Source: Octopus bimaculoides
Taxonomy: Eukaryota
Direction of reading: 5' to 3'
DNA: 32,888 nucleotides
NCBI RefSeq assembly: GCF_001194135.2
Contig: NC_068982.1
Coordinates: forward strand, 42,984,344-43,017,231
Of this stretch, positions 3,799-31,239 are shown one piece after another (position 1 is the stretch's first letter; each line of letters opens with the position of its first letter). The translations under genes were made by a program, and so were the position numbers. Under the pieces are notes generated by a model, which saw only the letters and a list, made by a program, of their open reading frames with translations, made no database searches and was not told where the DNA came from.

Positions 3799-4030
3799 AT
3801 AGACGAAAAAAACAAAACAAAAAAAAGGTACCAGCGATAGATCGGGGTCGGAGCGTGGCCTGATCATTGCTTCATTTGTATTGTCCCTGTATTGTTAATT
3901 TCATTCGATTTTTTAATATTTTATTTAATTTTTAAAAGTCACATTTAATGTAAAATCATACTGCATTACTGATCCCATCTGTTGTTCTGTCCATTTCTAT
4001 GTTTAGCCCCCGGTGGGCAATAAAGAAATT

Positions 4031-4213
4031 GGTATTTCGTCTGCCATTACGTTCTGAGTTCAAATTCCACCGAGGTCGACTTTGCCTTTCATCCTTTCGG
4101 GGTAGATAAATTAAGTACCAGTTACGCACTGGGGTCGATGTAATCGACTTAATCCATTTGTCTGTCCTTGTTTGTCCCCTCTATGTTTAGCCCCTTGTGG
4201 ACAATAAAGAAAT
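4031..4213 (+). mobile_element. SINE family 1 body with Tx1-like 3' tail
   Basis: B-box-like gagttcaaattcc and gtcgactttgcctttcatcctttcgggg core. The tail ttgtcccctctatgtttagccccttgtggacaataaagaaat resembles 3997-4029. Confidence 0.9.
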
Positions 4214-4415
4214 CAGAATCCTTAACACACCGGGCGAAATATTTATCGGCATTTAGTCTGCCTGTACGTTCTGACTTCAAATTCCGCCGAGTTCGACTTT
4301 ACTTTCATCATTTCGGTGTCAATAAATTAATTATCTGTATTTCACTTGGGTCGATGTAATCAACTAGTCTCCTCCCACCAAATTTCAGGCCTTGCACCTT
4401 TAGTAGAAAGGAAAA
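4214..4415 (+). mobile_element. SINE family 1, lacking the first ~12 nt, standard tail
   Basis: cagaatccttaacacaccgggcgaaat...aaatttcaggccttgcacctttagtagaaag is homologous to 12190-12404. Confidence 0.9.
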
Positions 4416-5503: not shown

Positions 5504-5672
5504 TCTTTCTAATCTGAGCACGAGGGATGGGATTAAATCGATTACATCTACCTCGAAAAGATGAAAGGCAAAGTTGACCACGGCGGTATTTCATCTCAGA
5601 ATGTAAAAAGGCGGACGAAATGCAGCTGAGCATTTTGTCAACACGCTTACGATTCTACCAGCTCTCCACATT
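5504..5672 (-). mobile_element. SINE family 1, diverged
   Basis: Reverse complement of the core: gatgaaaggcaaagttgacc...tctcagaatgtaaa...ccagctctcc. Confidence 0.8.
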
Positions 5673-5689
5673 TAGAATAATGATAATGA

Positions 5690-6996: not shown

Positions 6997-7440
6997 GGAG
7001 GCGCAATGGCCCAGTGGTTAGGGCAGCGGACTCGCAGTCATAGGATAGCGGTTTCGATTCCCAGACCAGGCGTTGTGAGTGTTTATCAAGTGAAAACACC
7101 TAAAAGCTCCACGAGGCTCCGGCAGGGGATGGTGGCGAACCCTGCTGTACTCTTCCAACACAACTTTCTCTCACTCTTACTTCCTGTTGTGCCTGTAATT
7201 CAAAGGGCCAGCCTTATCACACTGTGTCACGCTGAATATCCCCGAGAACTACGTTAAGGNNNNNNNNNNAAGGGCCAGCCTTATCACACTGTGTCACGCT
7301 GAATATCCCCGAGAACTACGTTAAGGGCACACGTGTCTGTGGAGTGCTCAGCCATTTGCACGTTAATTTCACGAGCAGGCTGTTCCGTTGATTGGATCAA
7401 CTGGAACCCTCGACGTCGTGAGCGACGGAGTGCCAACAAC
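6997..7440 (+). mobile_element. tRNA-derived SINE, head A + 3' module X (contains a 10-N gap and a 57-bp assembly duplication)
   Basis: A-box tggcccagtggttagg and B-box ggtttcgattccc. The head is near-identical to 16107. The 3' module is shared with 7486-7761 and ends in a caacaac tail. Confidence 0.9.
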
Positions 7441-7761: not shown

Positions 7762-7901
7762 CTGCAAAATACTTAGCAACATTTCTTTCGGCTTTTCGTT
7801 CTGGTTTCAAATTCCACTGAGATAGATTTGCCTTTAATCCTTTCGCGTTTAAGCGCTGAGGGACGATGTGATCAACTAGCAGAATAAGCGACCACGTAAA
7901 G

Positions 7902-11817: not shown

Positions 11818-11980
11818 ATGAGTTCAAATTCCGCCGATTTCGACTTTCCCTTTCATCCCTCCGGGTCAATAAATTAAGTACCAGTTACGCACTAGGGGGT
11901 CGATATAATCGACTTAATCCCTTTGTCTGTCCTTGTTTGTCTCCTCTATGTTTAGCCCCTTGTGGGCAATAATGAAATAA
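11818..11980 (+). mobile_element. SINE family 1, 5'-truncated, with Tx1-like 3' tail
   Basis: gagttcaaattccgccg...gtcgatataatcgacttaatccctttgtctgtccttgtttgtctcctctatgtttagccccttgtgggcaataatgaaataa. Confidence 0.9.
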
Positions 11981-12185
11981 GAAACGTTAGCACGCCGGGC
12001 GAAATTCTTTGCGATATTTCTTCTGTCTTTATGTTCTGAGCTCAAATTCCACCGAGGTCGACTTTGCCTTTCATCCTTTCGGGGTCGATACATTAAGGAC
12101 CAGTTGCGTACTGCGTCGATCTAATCGACTGCCCCCCCTCCCCCCAAATTTCCAGCTTTGTGTCTAGAGTAGAAAAAATATTTCT
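11981..12185 (+). mobile_element. SINE family 1, lacking the first ~14 nt, standard tail
   Basis: Starts gaaacgttagcacgccgggcgaaat and ends tgtgtctagagtagaaaaaata. Confidence 0.9.
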
Positions 12186-12189
12186 AAAA

Positions 12190-12404
12190 GGTGCCGAGCT
12201 GGCATAAACGTTAGCAAGCCGGGCGAAATGCTTAGCGGTATTTCGTCTGTCTTTATGTTCTGAGTTGAAATTCCGGCGAGGTCGACTTTGCCTTTCATCC
12301 TTTAGAGGTCGATAAATTAAGTACCAGTTGCGTACTGAGGTTGATCTAATTGACTGACCCTCCACCCAAAATTTCGGACCTTGTGCCTAGAGTAGAAAAG
12401 AATA
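12190..12404 (+). mobile_element. SINE family 1, full-length
   Basis: ggtgccgagctggcataaacgttagc (A-box-like), gagttgaaattcc (B-box-like), tail gtgcctagagtagaaaagaata. Confidence 0.92.
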
Positions 12405-13178
12405 GGATCTTTTTTAAAACGGGGGCCACATTTTTCATTAATGTTTTACGTAGTGTTTTTGGTACCGAAAGACTTTCAAACTTCGTATACTTATCTATTT
12501 TGTNNNNNNNNNNNNNNNNNNNNNNNNNNNNNNNNNNNNNNNNNNNNNNNNNNNNNNNNNNNNNNNNNNNNNNNNNNNNNNNNNNNNNNNNNNNNNNNNN
12601 NNNNNNNNNNNNNNNNNNNNNNNNNNNNNNNNNNNNNNNNNNNNNNNNNNNNNNNNNNNNNNNNNNNNNNNNNNNNNNNNNNNNNNNNNNNNNNNNNNNN
12701 NNNNNTGTCTTATTTCGATAATTTCAACCAATCACTGACAAGTATTCAGTTGTTTACATTTACTCCTTTGGCTCATTAAGCGATGTAAAGCGTATTTAAT
12801 CTCCATACCTTCGTTTTATTTGCTTTTTTCATTTTAAATTTGCTTTTTTCATTTTAAATTTGCTTTAACCCTAACCCTAACCCTAACCCTAACCCTAGGG
12901 TTAGGGTTAGGGTTAGAGTTAGGGTTAGGGTTAGGGTTAATTGTTTCAGAATCGTTTGTTTATGTAGTCGGCACTTAATGTATATCGGCTGAATGGACGT
13001 CAGTGATTGGTTGAAATTACAGAAATACGACAACTTTAACATGGAATAATTTATGGATTTCTTTTTTTTTTAAGAAGACTAAGAGAAAAAGATGTTTTAT
13101 ATGACACATTCTACCAGTGTTCCAAGTTTCAAAGTGTTTCGTTAATGAAAAATGTGGCCCCCGTTTTAAAAAAGATCC
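12405..13178. mobile_element. Non-autonomous TIR element (MITE), perfect 37-bp TIRs, 8-bp TSD; Merlin-like
   Basis: ggatcttttttaaaacgggggccacatttttcattaa (12405-12441) has its exact reverse complement at 13142-13178. TSD aaagaata at 12397-12404 and 13179-13186. GG termini plus an 8-bp TSD fit Merlin; the superfamily is inferred. N-gap 12504-12705. Confidence 0.9.
12865..12940. repeat. Inverted telomeric-type array (TAACCC)5-TAGGG-(TTAGGG)6 with one TTAGAG variant
   Basis: Directly visible; palindrome centre CCCTAGGG at 12893-12900. Confidence 0.97.
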
Positions 13179-13382
13179 AAAGAATATATATTATAACGTA
13201 AAAAGTATAATAAACAAACTAATAGATTAACACTAACTAAAGTTATATCTTATTACATAATAGCGCCAATCCATAAATAGATTAACACCGCAAAGTATCA
13301 CAAAGTATCACAAAGTAGTTAGAGCACATACAAAAATGCATTAATTATTGACACAAGAATCTTTTATAATTACTTTTTTTTT

Positions 13383-13585
13383 CTACTTTATTCAGTCATT
13401 GTAATGCTGTTATTCCGGAGCAGCACCTTAAAGAGTTTAGTCGAACGAATCGACCCCCAGTTTTTTCATTTTTCAGTCTGGTAATTATTCTATCGGATCC
13501 CTTTTGTTGAGCCACTAAATTATGTGATCATAACAAACAAACACGTGTTAAGTGGTGCCGGGTTACAAAGATTCACACACATACA
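13383..13585 (-). mobile_element. SINE-like interspersed repeat, family 3
   Basis: ttcagtcatt...ggagcagcacctt...tttagtcgaacgaatcgacccccag...aattattctatcgg is the reverse complement of a sequence homologous to 31598-31810. Confidence 0.65.
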
Positions 13586-13654
13586 CACACATACGCATAC
13601 ATACATACTTACATACTTAGGAGAAAATCTATAAAACAAACTAGCAACATTTCC

Positions 13655-14232
13655 ATCAATGATTTGACTGTTTCCCCTACATCTGACGAAGAATGTTACA
13701 GGTATCTAGGGGTGAATGAAAACATATTTTACAATGACACCTGTAACAAAACACGTGTCACTAAAGAATATTACAGCCGAATCGAGAAAATTTGGACCTT
13801 AGAACTCTCTTCGCTCAATAAAACAATGGCCCACAATGTGTTTGCAGTGCCATTACTCATGCTAAAATTTGGGCTGCTTGATTGAACGCTTCATGAGATC
13901 CGAGCCATTGATGTCAAAACCCGAAAAATACTAACAAGCATACATAATTTCAACATAAACAGTGACGTAGAACGCCTCTACCTAAAACGAAAACAAGGCG
14001 GCAGATGCTTAACATCGGTCCAAAATGCTTTTGAGAATATCGTATCATATCTATTCGGTAACATCTTTTAAACATCAAGTGTCGAAGTGTATCCCTTTAA
14101 AAAATTTGCACAAATGAGGCTAATAACATCATAAGACTTGGAAGGCAGCTTCTTGAGCAACATTCTTTGGCCAAAAAAGTCGCATGACTCTACGTCAACG
14201 TATTATCAGTTAAAAGGATGAGCCTATATGCG
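13655..14232 (+). mobile_element. R4/Dong-clade non-LTR fragment (RT C-terminus/thumb)
   Basis: YRYLGVNE...KEYYSRIEKIWTLELSSLNKTMAHNVFAVP...FGLLD*T..EIRAIDVKTRKILT...DVERLYLKRKQGGR, then frameshifts. Confidence 0.85.
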
Positions 14233-14490
14233 CAGAAATTTTTGTTGGGTCAGTTTAAGTTAATGGTAAAGCACTGGACGCGTAATCACGGGGATCTGAG
14301 TTCGTGTCTCATGGCTGGCCGCCAACAGATTTTTCTGCAAAATATGGATGGTTTTATCTTGTTCGTGCTATATTATTGGCACTATCATGCGTTTGAGAAT
14401 AAAATTATTTCCTTATCTGTATCTTTCAATACATCGCAACGCTTCGAAAGCAAACATTGTTGACTTTCAACGTAAGTAGAATTTAATATA
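14232..14490 (+). pseudogene. tRNA-Thr(CGT)-like cassette, unit 1 (tRNA-like 14249-14319) + shared ~170-bp body
   Basis: Acceptor gtcagtt/ggctggc, D-arm aatggtaaagc, loop cgcgtaa, T-arm ctgag-ttcgtgt-ctcat. The anticodon stem is defective. Flanked by a 17-bp inverted repeat. Confidence 0.7.
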
Positions 14491-14616
14491 TATATATTTA
14501 ACATCTCATACATTCATTTACACATACATAAAATAACTGAGGATATTTCCAAAAAGATCATCTAAGACATTAAGTCAGACAACAATAAATTCAAAATTGC
14601 ATCCATGCTAAACATA

Positions 14617-14870
14617 TGAAAAAAATCTGTCGGTGACCAATCATGAAACACGAACTCATATCCCTGTGAATACACGGATAGTGCATTACCATAAAGCTAA
14701 ACTGTCCCAACGATCATTTCTGTAAAATATGGATAGTTTATCCTGTTCATGCTATACTATTAGCAATATCCTGCGTTTGAGAATAAAATTATTTTCTTAT
14801 CAATATCTTTCAATACTCTCAGCGCTTCTAAAACAAACTTTTTTTATTTTCAACTTAAGCTGAATATAAC
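14617..14870 (-). pseudogene. tRNA-like cassette, unit 2: head inverted (14634-14707, minus), body on plus strand
   Basis: The reverse complement reads gttgggacagtttagctttatggtaatgcac...atgagttcgtgtttcatgattggtcaccgacagattttt. The downstream ctgtaaaatatggatagtttatcctg body matches units 1 and 3 in plus orientation. Confidence 0.75.
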
Positions 14871-14914
14871 GTACGATAGCATCTTATAATGCTAGATCTA
14901 TATATCTTAAATTT

Positions 14915-15110
14915 GCAGAAGAATTTGTCGTTAGGTCAGTTTAACTTAATGGTAAAGCATTGACGCGTAATCACAGAGATGTGAGTTCAAGACTCCTGGC
15001 TGGCCGCCGACAGATTTTTCTGTAAAATATGGATAGTTTATCCTGTTCATGTTATTATTAGCATTATTCTGCGTTCGAGAATAAAATTATTTCCTTATCT
15101 GTACCTTTCA
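14915..15110 (+). pseudogene. tRNA-Thr(CGT)-like cassette, unit 3 (tRNA-like 14935-15005) + body
   Basis: ggtcagtttaacttaatggtaaagcattgacgcgtaatcacagagatgtgagttcaagactcctggctggccgccgacagatttttctgtaaaatatgg. It runs into the N-gap 15118-15378. Confidence 0.7.
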
Positions 15111-15417
15111 TGTATATNNNNNNNNNNNNNNNNNNNNNNNNNNNNNNNNNNNNNNNNNNNNNNNNNNNNNNNNNNNNNNNNNNNNNNNNNNNNNNNNNNN
15201 NNNNNNNNNNNNNNNNNNNNNNNNNNNNNNNNNNNNNNNNNNNNNNNNNNNNNNNNNNNNNNNNNNNNNNNNNNNNNNNNNNNNNNNNNNNNNNNNNNNN
15301 NNNNNNNNNNNNNNNNNNNNNNNNNNNNNNNNNNNNNNNNNNNNNNNNNNNNNNNNNNNNNNNNNNNNNNNNNNNNNNTATATGTATATGTTTTATATAT
15401 ATATATATATATAAAAC

Positions 15418-16429: not shown

Positions 16430-17720
16430 ATATATATGGTGGTTGTCTACTCCTTATACTGTATCTGACCACCTCCTGTACCTATACCTTAGATCCATCA
16501 TGGCGTCTGGCGTGGCTTTTTAAACCAGAAAATATTTTGAAGAGACACCCACATAGATTGCACATCCGATTTGGACCAGCAAGAGCTGCAGTTTTGTTCT
16601 GATCTTTTGAGATCTTAAAATGTCTTTTGAGGCTTCTTTAGATTTGTAGACCTTATGGCACTGAAAGGCATGCATAGACATATAGGCAGAATAGTTGGTG
16701 GCGGTTCATTTCACATAGGTCCGCAAATGAGATTTGAGCCCAGCAAAAGAAAGCATGGTCTGTCACAAACTGTGCATACAAAAAGGTCATTGTACTTCAC
16801 CTGCTCGATCGTAACATTCCTCTTTAAATCTCTCTTGAGTCTTGCATCCGTTATTCTGGCCTCTTCAAGCGCTTTCACTCCACATCACACACTTTTTCGC
16901 CATCCAGCTCGATCCAAAGCAATGGTTTCTATGTCCTCTGGATCCATTCCAAGTGACTTCATGGTAGTCCTTATGCCGTCCTTAAACCTCTTTTCAGGTT
17001 TACACCGATAGCGTTTCTCCTCTCCAAGTTCACCATAAATCAGCACTTCGGGTGTGCGTTCATCCACCATTGGAACAATATGGCTACACCACTACATTTG
17101 GTTTTTCAGAATCATTGCTTTAATTGAAGTGATGCTTGCAGACGCAAGAACATCTTTGTTCGGAGTTAAAGAACTCCATTTAATGTTTAAAATGCGATGA
17201 AAGCATTTTTGGAGGAATTGTTCTAACAATTTGAAATGTCTTTCATAACACGCCCATGTTTCAGAAGAATACAACAGAGATGGTAAGACAAATGATTTGT
17301 AAAGAGCCAATTTTGTGTTGTTATTTATATGTCGTTGGCCCCAAACGCGTGACTCCAAACCCTTTGAATTCGCAGATTTATTTCTGTGTCCAGACATCCA
17401 TCATTCTGTACAGAGCTTCCAAGGTAGATGAAAGAATCTACAACCTCAAGTAAGTTACCCTTAAAAATGTTATGGTGCCACAAACAGCACCATATGCAAG
17501 GGGATACATTACAACTGGGTTTTTTTTTTCAAGTTGATGGTGAAACCAAAATCATCACAATCTGAGTCAAATACAGATACAAAGAATTGCAGACCTGTTT
17601 CAGAATAACTGACTAGATCGTTATCGTCAGCATATGAATTCCCTAATGAGTAAAATAAAAACCTTCGTTTTGAATTTCATAGGGCGGAGAAACACCCGAG
17701 CAGCCAACGGCATCCGAGAA
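16430..17720 (-). mobile_element. RTE (BovB-like) LINE 3' half: RT to C-terminal zinc fingers and 3'UTR
   Basis: KTKVFILLIREF-YADD (17623-17634), FIYLGS, TKLALYKSFVLPSLLYSSETW, LIYGEL, KRFKD...ALDRAGWR, C2H2 fingers, stop at 16482-16484. Multiple stops and frameshifts. Confidence 0.92.
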
Positions 17721-25419: not shown

Positions 25420-27420
25420 TCATGTTGTAAACATAACAATGGTTTACAGAGCAATTGAGGCTTACATAAAAATAGTTGTTCTACCCTAATTTTGGGGTGC
25501 TGATTTCAGATACAAAACCAGTTTTCATTCATCACCTCTAGTATTTCAGATATATATTATTATGATTTTGCGACAATTCGTGAAGCATTTATATGATCAA
25601 TTTCTATTTTGTTTTCCAGATTTTTGTGATACACATGATATATATATCTACAATGGTTTCAGGCACTTCAAAACACCGAGAATGCATCAGCAGGGCAAAT
25701 TCATTTTGCTACGTATGTGGGGATTTCACGACAGTTGTAGAGCCCCGAACAATTACTTCCCTCCAGAGAAGTGTTTACTTTCATTATTTTGACTGTAAAA
25801 TTGGAAATCAGGACAAATCCTGAGCACCTCACATCTGTTGTAAACTCTGCTACAATGGAATAACTGCATGGCTTAACGGCAAGAAAGCAGCCTTCAACTT
25901 TTCTGTCCCGATGGTCTGAAGCGAGCCAGGAAGCCATGCAGATGGTTATTGTTTTTGTCTAACAATTATAACAGCTTTCAATGCTTCTTCCGGAAAAAGA
26001 TCAAATATCCCAACCTTCCATCAGCTATGAGACGTGTCCCCCACTCAAATGATCTCCCTTTCCCTACACGCTCCAGCAAATAAGGGTCGTCTTCTTCCTT
26101 CATCAGATGAAGAAATGCCATCAAGGGAACATTCTGCCAAGTCGACCTCTTCTAATGACAATGTCTCTGTTTATTCAGGAGCAAGTGGTAATGAGCTCCA
26201 CTGGATCACACAGGAACACCTGAACGACTTTGCCCGTGATTTGTAACTATCTAAGCAGCAGTCAGAGCTCCTGGCATCCTGGCTTAGGCAGTGGAACCTA
26301 GTCAAGGCAGATGTAAGGACCACCAATTTCAGAACACGGAACCAGGACTTTGCTTCCTTCCTCGACATCGAAAACAGATTGTGCTACTGCACAAATGTCT
26401 CTGGCTTGTTCACTTTTCTTGGTGTCCCACACACTCTCTCAAATTGGCATCTTTTCATACACACTACCAAGTGAAGTCTGAAGTTTGTGCTCTTGCGCAA
26501 TGGGAATAAATATCCCAGCATTCCCTTTGCCTACTCAGTCCATCTGAAGGAGTGGTGTGATACTGTGGAGCTCCTTTTGGAAGCTCTCAAGTACAACCAG
26601 TACCAATGGAACCTGCGGGGACCTCTAGGTAATTGGGCTCCTTATGGGTATGCAAGCGGTCTTCACAAAGTACTGTTGCTTTCTCTGTCTCTGGGATAGT
26701 CGCGTTGAGTCCAAGCACTACAAGCAGAAGGACTGAGGATCTAGGGGCACTTTAGTGCCTGGTGAACACAGTGTCCAAGAAAATCCTCTGGTGGACATGA
26801 ACAAAGTGCCTTTGCCTCCTCTTCATATCAAACTTGTGCACTCTGTTCCCAGCTCTGAGGTATGCTAAGCTCAAGGAGGGCATCTTGGTCGGATCTCAGA
26901 TCGGAGAGGTGCTGAAGTATAAGGAGCTTCTTACTTTAAAGGAACTGAGAGCATGGAAAGCATTTAAGTCAGTCTGCTATGGTTTCTTTGGTAACACACG
27001 GGTACTAGATTACCAAGTGTGTCTTGAGAAGTTGTTACAGTCTTATGAGGATATGGAATGCCGACTGTCACTCAAAATTCACTTTCTCCACTCCCATCAC
27101 AACTTCTTCCCTCCGACGCTCGGAGCTGTGTGTGATGTGCATGGAGAAAGGTTCCACCAAGATATTACTAAGATGGAGATCAACTACCAAGGTAAGTGGA
27201 GGCCTAGCTTGATGGGGGACTTTTGCTGGATGCTCTTACGTGACATCTCGGAGGTAAATTACACAAGATCGACAAAAGAAGAACAAAAACTTCACTTCTG
27301 TCTGCTGTACTATGATTTGTGTGCATTGTATTATCCACGTAATTTAGTTCCATCAACGTTCTGTGGCTATGCTGTTGTTTTTCTGTAATATGCTTTTGTA
27401 ACAGAAGGAGTTTGTGATAA
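25420..27420 (+). mobile_element. Near-full-length CMC-superfamily (Chapaev3-like) DNA transposon, decayed; termini uncertain
   Basis: Subterminal ...ctaccctaattttggggtgctgatttcag... and the transposase motifs listed in the next feature. The right end is cut by a poly-T run and a SINE. Confidence 0.78.
25653..27300 (+). pseudogene. Chapaev3-like transposase, disrupted
   Basis: FCYVCG, DKS*APHICC..C, FSVPMV, YPNLPSA, LNDFARDL*LSK, SGTxxLASWLRQWNL-like segment, LLRNGNKYPSIP, WDSR (~26693), PPLHIKL followed by an in-gene deletion, AKLKEGI.VG.QI, SLKIHFLHSH, DVHGERFHQD, YQGKW...DFCW.L.RD. Many stops and frameshifts. Confidence 0.88.
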
Positions 27421-27461: not shown

Positions 27462-27680
27462 GTCGGCGAGTTGGCAAAATTGTTAACGCACCTGGCAAAA
27501 TGCTTAGCGGCATTTCACCCATATTTACTTTCTGAGTTCAAATTCCGCTGAGATCGACTTTGCTTTTCATCATTTCGGAGCCGATAAAATAAGTACCAGT
27601 TGAGAACTAAAGTCGATGTAATCGATTTACCCCTTTTGCTGAAATTGCTTGCCTTGTGCCAAAATTTGAGACTAATAATT
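27462..27680 (+). mobile_element. SINE family 1, full-length, diverged
   Basis: cggcgagttggcaaaattgttaacg...tgcttagcggcatttc...gagttcaaattccg...ttgccttgtgccaaaatttgagactaataat. It shows the uninterrupted form of the site split at 2576/4031. Confidence 0.9.
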
Positions 27681-30994: not shown

Positions 30995-31190
30995 TTCTGT
31001 AACAATGCCAGCAAATTTTAGGGGCGAAAGCAAATTCATTATATTAAACGTAGTACTGCACTTGTACTTATTTTATTGACTCCGAAAGGCAAAGTCTACC
31101 TCGGTGGCATTTGAACTCAGTACGTAAAGCCAAAGGAAATGCCATTAAGCCTTTTCCCCGGATGCTAATGATTACGCCAGCTCGCCACTT
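30995..31190 (-). mobile_element. SINE family 1, diverged
   Basis: gaaaggcaaagtctacctcggtggcatttgaactcagtacgtaaag...gctaatgattacgccagctcgcc. Confidence 0.82.
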
Positions 31191-31239
31191 TTACCAAATC
31201 TGTAATTATAAAAAATATACGTACATTCATACATACCCC

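What the first reader, a model, noticed from the sequence alone, without database searches (positions are those of the whole stretch)
14232..15110. Three tandem tRNA-Thr-like cassettes bracketed by inverted repeats, with the middle cassette flipped
Seen: three units share a ~170-bp body beginning ctg(c/t)aaaatatggat at ~14334, 14720 and 15020. In units 1 and 3 the tRNA-like head points forward. In unit 2 it is reversed while the body stays forward. In unit 1 the head lies between gcagaaatttttgttgg (14232-14248) and ccaacagatttttctgc (14321-14337), a near-perfect 17-bp inverted repeat, and unit 2's inversion ends map to these repeats. Inference: IR-mediated inversion of a Pol III promoter cassette, either a one-off hairpin/template-switch event or a recurrent switch that uncouples the body from its promoter. 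Alternatively it is a tiny MITE that captured a tRNA. The anticodon stems are broken, so these are not functional tRNAs.
Basis: partly seen in the sequence, partly recalled or inferred. Interest (0 to 1): 0.7.

Follow-up and report, generated by a model that had tools for sequence, protein, structure and literature searches.

The report
Flipped tRNA-like module in repeat cluster
Three decayed copies of a ~255-base repeat that begins with a threonine-tRNA-like piece lie side by side in a draft animal genome, and in the middle copy that piece was turned around in place between two short inverted repeats, which looks like an ordinary one-off rearrangement and not a genetic switch.

Summary
Three units lie at 14232-15117. 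Each has a ~105-nt head (a tRNA-Thr(CGU)-like core between 15-17-nt inverted repeats) joined to an AT-rich body of at least 150 nt. Heads 1 and 3 point forward. Head 2 (14621-14722) is the reverse complement (79% over 102 nt, E about 1e-21), while body 2 stays forward and in register. The heads are not working tRNAs: ARAGORN finds none, and Rfam scores only head 3, at 20.3 bits against a threshold of 29.

My best reading is a small local cluster of a decayed tRNA-derived repeat in which one head was inverted in place between its flanking repeats, by template switching or by recombination between the repeats. The event looks old and single.

The "Pol III promoter uncoupled from its body" idea is weakened. 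A T5-T7 run, which resembles a Pol III terminator, sits between every tRNA-like core and whatever follows it.

The MITE idea lacks target-site duplications. A genuine TIR element 1.8 kb upstream shows them clearly.

No other copy exists in the window or in any collection I could search, so head orientations could not be counted genome-wide and reads could not be checked. One point remains unexplained: head 2 carries 15 private substitutions and its body only 3. Interest is low to moderate.

The parts
14232..14248 (+). Unit 1, left inverted-repeat arm GCAGAAATTTTTGTTGG
   Evidence: pairs with 14322-14338 (14/17 WC; RNA fold)
14248..14324 (+). Unit 1, tRNA-Thr(CGU)-like core (degenerate)
   Evidence: relaxed ARAGORN -ps80; no call at default; no Rfam hit at E<=10
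14322..14338 (+). Unit 1, right inverted-repeat arm CCAACAGATTTTTCTGC, holding a T5 run (14330-14334)
14335..14486 (+). Unit 1 body (AT-rich, about 150 nt shared with unit 2), followed by a low-complexity, non-homologous spacer 14487-14618
14619..14635 (-). Unit 2, reverse complement of the right-type repeat arm (AAAAAAATCTGTCGGTG on +; T7 on the minus strand)
14632..14707 (-). Unit 2, inverted tRNA-like core, the most decayed copy
   Evidence: (I1); ARAGORN only at -ps70 with a 4-base 'anticodon'; no Rfam hit
14706..14723 (-). Unit 2, reverse complement of the left-type repeat arm (CCCAACGATCATTTCTGT on +), fused seamlessly to the forward body; 6-nt overlap of forward and inverted homology at 14717-14722
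14720..14869 (+). Unit 2 body, forward, in register with bodies 1 and 3; 46-nt spacer 14870-14915
14916..14930 (+). Unit 3, left inverted-repeat arm CAGAAGAATTTGTCG
   Evidence: 15/15 pairs as RNA including 2 G-U; 13/15 WC
14934..15008 (+). Unit 3, tRNA-Thr(CGU)-like core, the best-preserved copy
   Evidence: Rfam RF00005 at 14935-15005, 20.3 bits, E=0.23, below gathering score 29; relaxed ARAGORN
15008..15022 (+). Unit 3, right inverted-repeat arm CGACAGATTTTTCTG with a T5 run (15015-15019)
15020..15117 (+). Unit 3 body, truncated by assembly gap 15118-15378, so the cluster may continue

Best explanation
This is a small local cluster of at least three copies (the third runs into an assembly gap) of a decayed composite repeat of about 255 bp. 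Each copy has a tRNA-Thr(CGU)-derived pseudogene module with its own T-run, held between 15-17-bp inverted repeats, followed by an AT-rich body of about 150 nt.

In the middle copy, the segment bounded by the inverted repeats was turned around in place. The likely mechanism is pairing of the two arms as a hairpin or cruciform, followed by an inter-strand template switch during replication, or else recombination between the arms. Either route leaves the body in its original orientation and register.

Shown: the three copies, the inversion, its ends in the repeats, and the non-functional state of the tRNA-like parts. Inferred: the mechanism, that it happened once and long ago, and that the locus has no function.
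For: (1) Head 2 is the reverse complement of heads 1 and 3 over 102 nt (E about 1e-21), while body 2 is forward and in register.
(2) The inverted homology stops inside the repeat arms. At the body side it overlaps the forward homology by 6 nt, as expected for a breakpoint within an inverted repeat.
(3) The repeat arms are present in the uninverted copies, so they predate the flip. They are rarer than chance: 13/15 occurs around 0.35% and 12/15 around 1% of random sites. Unit 3 folds into a 15-bp stem, z=-4.45.
(4) Three copies lie within 0.9 kb and none in the other ~30 kb, even by nhmmer profile. The window's common SINE-like repeat, by contrast, has 7 or more dispersed copies. This fits local duplication better than repeated insertion.
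(5) No target-site duplications of 6 nt or more flank heads or units. A real TIR element at 12405-13178 shows a clean 8-bp duplication.
(6) Copies differ by 10-25%, so the events are old and the copies are not assembly duplicates.
(7) In-place inversion of the segment between two stem halves by template switching is documented in PMC8794818. Small repeat-bounded inversions are well known in plastid DNA (PMC6824564, listed).
Against: The spacers and the sequence upstream of the heads are not significantly alike, so a tandem-duplication origin is inferred from clustering, not shown. TRF does not call an array.

Only the body-side junction can be read. The other junction has no forward homology to compare with.

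Head 2 is more diverged than a simple flip predicts. Head 2 against head 3 is 75%, while body 2 against body 3 is 90% (Fisher p=0.008). Head 2 has 15 private substitutions and its body 3. This needs an extra assumption: error-prone synthesis at the event, exclusion of the inverted head from gene conversion among the direct repeats, or a separate origin.

The repeat in unit 2 is at chance level (10/15). The assembly is a gapped draft and no reads were available. No copy from any other locus or genome could be found.
Confidence: 0.55

Rival explanations
1. These are members of a dispersed tRNA-derived SINE family (head + body + tail) that landed three times in one spot. Unit 2 would descend from a source copy or subfamily whose head was already inverted, so the flip did not happen at this locus.
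For: The head/body layout and a total length of about 255 nt are typical of tRNA-derived SINEs (general knowledge; PMC4758252). The spacers between units are unrelated. Head 2 is an outlier while body 2 is not, which fits a different source copy. Body 1 ends in a (TA)n-like stretch.
Against: A conserved 15-17-nt leader lies upstream of the tRNA-like +1 in all copies. A T5-T7 run sits between the tRNA-like core and the body and would end a Pol III transcript. No target-site duplications were found. There is no other copy in 32 kb, although the window's true high-copy SINE-like repeat occurs about every 5 kb. An inverted-head copy has no forward internal promoter with which to propagate as a SINE.
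Confidence: 0.17
2. The ~105-bp head with its inverted repeats is a separate mobile module, a tiny MITE that captured a tRNA. It inserts in either orientation at a preferred site at the start of the body.
For: The terminal inverted repeats begin with CAG...CTG and bound the tRNA-like core. Both orientations occur at exactly the same position relative to the body. Head 2 has a divergence history different from its body.
Against: No target-site duplication flanks any of the three heads. All three bodies carry a head at the same base, which would need three identical site-specific insertions. No solo head or headless body occurs in the window. The repeats are imperfect, unlike the genuine TIR element at 12405-13178 (37/37 with an 8-bp duplication).
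Confidence: 0.07
3. Head 2's orientation is an assembly artefact of a gapped short-read draft.
For: The window has nine N gaps, and a 57-nt perfect duplicate either side of a 10-N gap at 7203-7326. One gap starts 400 nt downstream of unit 2.
Against: Head 2 differs from heads 1 and 3 by 21-25%, so it is not a misplaced copy of them. Its flanking repeats are too short and imperfect (10/15) to confuse a k-mer graph. The junction with body 2 is seamless.
Confidence: 0.08
4. This is a recurrent or programmed invertible cassette, a switch that flips the tRNA-like Pol III unit.
For: Only the geometry: a promoter-like module between inverted repeats, seen in both orientations.
Against: The T-run already separates the tRNA-like core from the body in the forward state. 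The repeat arms are short, mismatched and decayed in the flipped copy. The flipped head is the oldest-looking copy. None of the ten ORFs scanned hit any Pfam family, recombinases included. The tRNA-like parts fail tRNA detectors.
Confidence: 0.03

Closest known systems
Small inversions bounded by short inverted repeats (template-switch 'loop inversions' in hairpins, PMC8794818; plastid small inversions, PMC6824564)
   Same: The flipped segment is exactly the one between two short complementary arms. The flanks keep their orientation. The arms exist before the event. No enzyme or target duplication is needed.
   Different: The 'loop' here is about 72 nt and is a tRNA-like sequence. The documented RNA-gene cases mostly flip 4-8 nt. 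This locus is nuclear and apparently neutral, and recurrence has not been shown.
tRNA-derived SINEs of molluscs and other animals (e.g. families reviewed in PMC4758252)
   Same: A tRNA-related head with degenerate A/B-box-like motifs is followed by an unrelated body. Total length is about 255 nt. A tRNA-Thr origin is known for some mollusc SINE heads (Lsa_3 and Lsa_4).
   Different: The copies share a leader upstream of the tRNA start. A T5 run lies between the tRNA-like core and the body. There are no target-site duplications and no clear tail. The copies are clustered, not dispersed. No conserved SINE domain could be tested.
Tandemly repeated tRNA genes and tRNA pseudogene arrays (general knowledge, e.g. 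Xenopus tDNA repeats, Entamoeba tRNA arrays)
   Same: A tRNA-like unit with its own downstream T-run recurs head to tail with spacer DNA.
   Different: Only three copies are visible. The period is irregular (385 and 300 nt) and the spacers are not homologous. All copies are pseudogenes.
MITEs / foldback elements, such as the one at 12405-13178 in this window
   Same: Short inverted repeats bound a non-coding core.
   Different: The neighbouring element has 37/37 terminal repeats and an 8-bp target-site duplication. The heads have 13/15 to 14/17 repeats and no duplication.

Membership tests
Functional tRNA gene | Cloverleaf that passes standard detectors | tested here: not met
   ARAGORN at default finds 0 genes. 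Rfam RF00005 reaches only 20.3 bits for head 3 against a gathering score of 29, and finds nothing for heads 1 and 2 at E<=10.
Functional tRNA gene | Intact 5-bp anticodon stem and U33 | tested here: not met
   The relaxed ARAGORN drawings show 3-4 pairs with mismatches and G at position 33.
Functional tRNA gene | Run of 4 or more T shortly downstream (Pol III terminator) | tested here: met
   T5 at 14330-14334 and 15015-15019; T7 on the minus strand at 14619-14625.
tRNA-derived SINE | tRNA-related head with A and B boxes | tested here: inconclusive
   The D-loop and T-loop motifs are recognisable. By eye they match the textbook box consensus at only 5-7 of 9 positions.
tRNA-derived SINE | Copies start at or near the tRNA +1 and have no terminator before the body | tested here: not met
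   A conserved 15-17-nt leader and a T5-T7 run between the tRNA-like core and the body occur in all copies.
tRNA-derived SINE | Target-site duplications around each copy | tested here: not met
   No shared flank word of 6 nt or more. Old duplications could have decayed.
tRNA-derived SINE | Many dispersed copies in the genome | not testable with these tools
   No other copy in the window. The source genome is not in any searchable collection.
MITE | Terminal inverted repeats | tested here: met
   14/17 in unit 1 and 13/15 in unit 3, rarer than chance at about 0.3-1%. Decayed in unit 2.
MITE | Target-site duplication directly outside the repeats | tested here: not met
   None around any head. 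Contrast the 8-bp duplication AAAGAATA at the element 12405-13178.
Repeat-bounded small inversion (template switch or repeat recombination) | Inverted segment ends within a pair of inverted repeats and the flanks are unchanged | tested here: met
   Inverted homology 14621-14722 corresponds to 14334-14233. Forward body homology starts at 14717, a 6-nt overlap. The upstream flank has no homologue, so that side cannot be judged.
Repeat-bounded small inversion (template switch or repeat recombination) | The same repeats are present in uninverted relatives | tested here: met
   Units 1 and 3.
Programmed invertible switch | Both orientations present in a population; dedicated recombinase | not testable with these tools
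   No reads were available. The ten longest ORF translations gave no Pfam hit of any kind.
Tandem repeat / satellite | Head-to-tail copies with a regular period and homologous spacers | tested here: inconclusive
   Spacings are 385 and 300 nt. The spacers are not significantly alike. TRF makes no call. The array is cut by a gap.

The most novel reading that the evidence does not exclude
The tRNA-like core between inverted repeats could be a genome-wide module that flips or moves on its own. That would make it a family of Pol III-type cassettes found in both orientations next to the same body, giving either a eukaryotic invertible element or a tRNA-carrying MITE. A side effect would be long hairpin RNAs from oppositely oriented neighbours: heads 1 and 2 already form a 102-nt inverted repeat, and the fold has z=-11.2.
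Probability: 0.07. Interest if true: 0.6.

Novelty: new member of a known kind. Interest (0 to 1): 0.22.

Why it matters
If the reading is right, the locus is a tidy natural example of a roughly 100-bp in-place inversion mediated by 15-17-bp inverted repeats in an animal nuclear genome. It is useful as an illustration of template-switch or hairpin mutagenesis. It also warns repeat annotators that the head and body of a composite repeat can disagree in strand. It has no evident bearing on gene function.

It would matter more only if a genome-wide census showed that such flips recur in this family.

Tried and rejected
1. Other copies elsewhere. I translated unit 1 and searched the 5.8-billion-protein index (nothing) and the 1.84-billion representative set. 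The two hits were a low-complexity repeat protein and an ankyrin-repeat protein, both chance.

2. Exact-pattern scans with conserved body and head words. I scanned JGI metagenomes, GTDB genomes and IMG/VR. BLAST showed that every hit matched only 20-30 nt, which is chance.

3. Related genome DNA. I fetched 74 kb around relatives of the window's transposon ORF and LINE fragment from ENA assemblies ERZ21867824 and ERZ25878582. These hold neither this element nor the window's common SINE-like repeat, so they come from another taxon.

4. The window's own ORFs are not on record, so neither the source record nor extra flanks could be obtained.

5. Is the body's 3' part derived from the LINE just upstream? 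The shared 15-mer at 14025/14387 is within shuffle expectation. Rejected.

6. Is the 134-nt spacer before head 2 a reverse-complement body, which would make the locus a fold-back inverted duplication? No similarity above shuffles. Rejected.

7. Do the sequences upstream of the three heads share homology, which would extend the repeat unit? Not significant. My by-eye alignment was not supported.

8. The 'CCA' after the acceptor stem in unit 1 as a sign of retro-copying of a mature tRNA. Units 2 and 3 have CCG, and CpG decay explains the CCA. Not pursued.

9. Relaxed ARAGORN as proof of tRNA identity. It is unspecific at that setting.

10. The taxon. The composition, the TTAGGG-type repeats and a SINE-like repeat that I recall from cephalopod sequence suggest a mollusc. 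That rests on memory only and was not confirmed. The octopus genome paper is not held.

Full report
**Setting.** The window is a draft eukaryotic scaffold. It has nine N gaps, about 34% G+C, many microsatellites and TTAGGG-type repeats. No tRNA gene and no Rfam family reaches threshold anywhere in it. A degraded LINE reverse-transcriptase fragment in the + frame lies directly upstream of the finding, at about 13511-14065. It is 52-54% identical in protein to an ENA metagenome protein. I could not identify the organism. A mollusc or cephalopod origin is my recollection from the look of the common SINE-like repeat, not a result.

**The observation.**
- Self-BLAST and the repeat finder show three units.
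- Head 1 is at 14232-14337 and head 3 at 14920-15022. They are direct repeats, 85.6% identical.
- Head 2, at 14621-14722, is their reverse complement: 79.4% to head 1 over 102 nt (E=3e-21) and 75% to head 3.
- The bodies (14334-14486, 14719-14869, 15019-15110) are all forward and 84-90% alike. The third is cut by gap 15118-15378.
- The motif CTG[CT]AAAATATGGAT starts at 14335, 14720 and 15020.
- There is no further head or body in the window, by BLAST or by nhmmer profiles.

**Anatomy of a head.**
- Each forward head is a ~73-nt tRNA-like core between complementary arms. Unit 1 has GCAGAAATTTTTGTTGG (14232-14248) and CCAACAGATTTTTCTGC (14322-14338), 14/17 Watson-Crick.
- Unit 3 has CAGAAGAATTTGTCG (14916-14930) and CGACAGATTTTTCTG (15008-15022), 13/15 Watson-Crick. 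All 15 pair as + strand RNA with two G-U pairs, and the fold has z=-4.45.
- In 20,000 random 73-nt segments of this window, flanks this complementary occur at 0.35% (13/15 or better) and 1% (12/15 or better). The repeat is therefore real but not 'near-perfect'. In unit 2 it has decayed to chance level (10/15).

**tRNA likeness of the core.**
- The core shows an 8-bp acceptor-like stem, the D-loop motif TTAATGGTAAAGC, the T-loop motif GAGTTCAAGACTC and a CGT 'anticodon' in a broken stem.
- Rfam's tRNA model scores head 3 at 20.3 bits (gathering score 29) and finds nothing in heads 1 and 2.
- ARAGORN calls Thr(cgt) only at 80% stringency. At that setting it is unspecific: 21 calls in the window against 14.2 in shuffles.
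- 'Degenerate tRNA-Thr-like' is therefore a fair description, and the isotype is tentative.

The outer part of the 3' arm holds a T5 run in units 1 and 3, and a T7 run on the minus strand in unit 2. It lies immediately after the tRNA-like core. From what is established about animal Pol III termination, four or more T's would end a transcript that starts in the head before it reaches the body.
- The head therefore looks like a self-contained tRNA-gene-like unit with its terminator, not like the promoter of the body.
- Flipping it would not 'uncouple' anything that was coupled.
- The same feature, together with the conserved leader upstream of the tRNA start, argues against a classical SINE.

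**The inversion.**
- The inverted homology of head 2 runs from the second base of the left arm to the thirteenth base of the right arm of head 1 (14233-14334).
- Forward homology with unit 1 resumes at 14717. The two homologies therefore overlap by 6 nt (TTTCTG, 14717-14722), which is both the end of the right arm and the complement of the start of the left arm.
- This is what a breakpoint inside an inverted repeat looks like.
- The other junction cannot be judged, because the sequences upstream of the three heads share no significant similarity.
- The 134-nt spacer before head 2 is not a reverse-complement body, so the locus is not a fold-back inverted duplication.
- No target-site duplication of 6 nt or more flanks any head or unit.
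- By contrast, a true TIR element 1.8 kb upstream (12405-13178) has 37/37 terminal repeats and an exact 8-bp duplication. The window can therefore show such hallmarks when they exist.

**Most likely history.** A composite repeat of a tRNA-like module plus a body was multiplied locally. The evidence is three copies in 0.9 kb and none in the remaining ~30 kb, while the window's common SINE-like repeat is scattered about every 5 kb. Later, one module was inverted in place by its own flanking repeats. In-place inversion of the sequence between two stem halves by inter-strand template switching is documented (PMC8794818). Small repeat-bounded inversions are commonplace in plastid DNA (PMC6824564). 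Divergence of 10-25% among copies makes the events old. It also rules out the copies being assembly duplicates.

**What does not fit neatly.** Head 2 is more diverged than its body.
- Head 2 against head 3 is 75% identical, while body 2 against body 3 is 90% (Fisher p=0.008). Units 1 and 3 show no such contrast.
- Private substitutions number 4, 15 and 9 in heads 1, 2 and 3, against 6, 3 and 8 in the first 95 nt of the bodies.
- Possible reasons are error-prone synthesis during the event, continued gene conversion among the direct repeats from which an inverted segment is excluded, or a separate origin of head 2 (a SINE subfamily or a mobile head). I cannot choose among these with three copies, and this is the main reason my confidence stays near 0.55.

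**Searches for relatives.** All were negative.
- Translated-repeat searches of the two protein collections found nothing real.
- Exact-word scans of JGI metagenomes, GTDB genomes and IMG/VR gave only chance 20-30-mers.
- 74 kb of ENA contigs that carry relatives of the window's transposon and LINE hold neither this repeat nor the window's common SINE-like repeat.
- Window ORFs are not on record.

**Verdict.** The 'switch that uncouples a Pol III promoter from its body' and the 'MITE that captured a tRNA' readings are not supported. This is a new instance of known kinds of things, namely a tRNA-derived repeat and a repeat-bounded small inversion, and is of modest interest.

Noticed in passing
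window 12397-13186: A TIR element lies at 12405-13178. It has perfect 37-bp terminal inverted repeats (12405-12441 / 13142-13178), an exact 8-bp target-site duplication AAAGAATA (12397-12404 / 13179-13186) and a subterminal inverted repeat (12706-12749 / 12989-13032, 84%). Its centre is a palindrome of telomere-type repeats, (TAACCC)5 followed by (TAGGGT)7, at 12866-12939. It contains an N gap (12504-12705) and abuts a copy of the common SINE-like repeat. The 8-bp duplication suggests a hAT-like or foldback element; the internal telomere-repeat palindrome is unusual.
   Followed up: partly
window 4028-4413, 5546-5677, 7764-7845, 11819-12404, 27467-27638, 31038-31192: An abundant SINE-like repeat of about 220 bp is scattered through the window. 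It includes a 1.9-copy tandem at 11982-12404 (TRF period 224). It is absent from 74 kb of the ENA relatives fetched.
   Followed up: partly
window 7203-7259 and 7270-7326: A 57-nt stretch is repeated at 100% identity on either side of a 10-N gap. This is most likely a gap-closing or scaffolding artefact and a reminder that the assembly is a draft.
   Followed up: no
window 14225-14730: Heads 1 and 2 form a 102-nt inverted repeat (79%) 286 nt apart. As one RNA the region would fold into a long imperfect hairpin (-162.7 kcal/mol, z=-11.2). This is a by-product of the flip. It could in principle give hairpin-derived small RNAs or promote further rearrangement.
   Followed up: partly
window 14621-14722 versus 14723-14816: The inverted head has 15 private substitutions and its own body has 3 (heads 1 and 3 have 4 and 9; bodies 1 and 3 have 6 and 8). 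This is unexplained. Gene conversion among the direct repeats that excludes the inverted piece is one candidate.
   Followed up: partly
window 25433-27402: A transposon-like region has about 80% nucleotide relatives on large ENA metagenome-assembly contigs (ERZ21867824). Its 195-aa open frame (26801-27385) belongs to a family of more than 260 predicted proteins and has no Pfam match.
   Followed up: partly
window 13511-14065 (+) and 17095-17400 (-): Degraded LINE reverse-transcriptase C-terminal fragments. The first ends about 170 nt upstream of unit 1. The 15-nt match between it and the repeat body (14025 / 14387) is within chance.
   Followed up: yes
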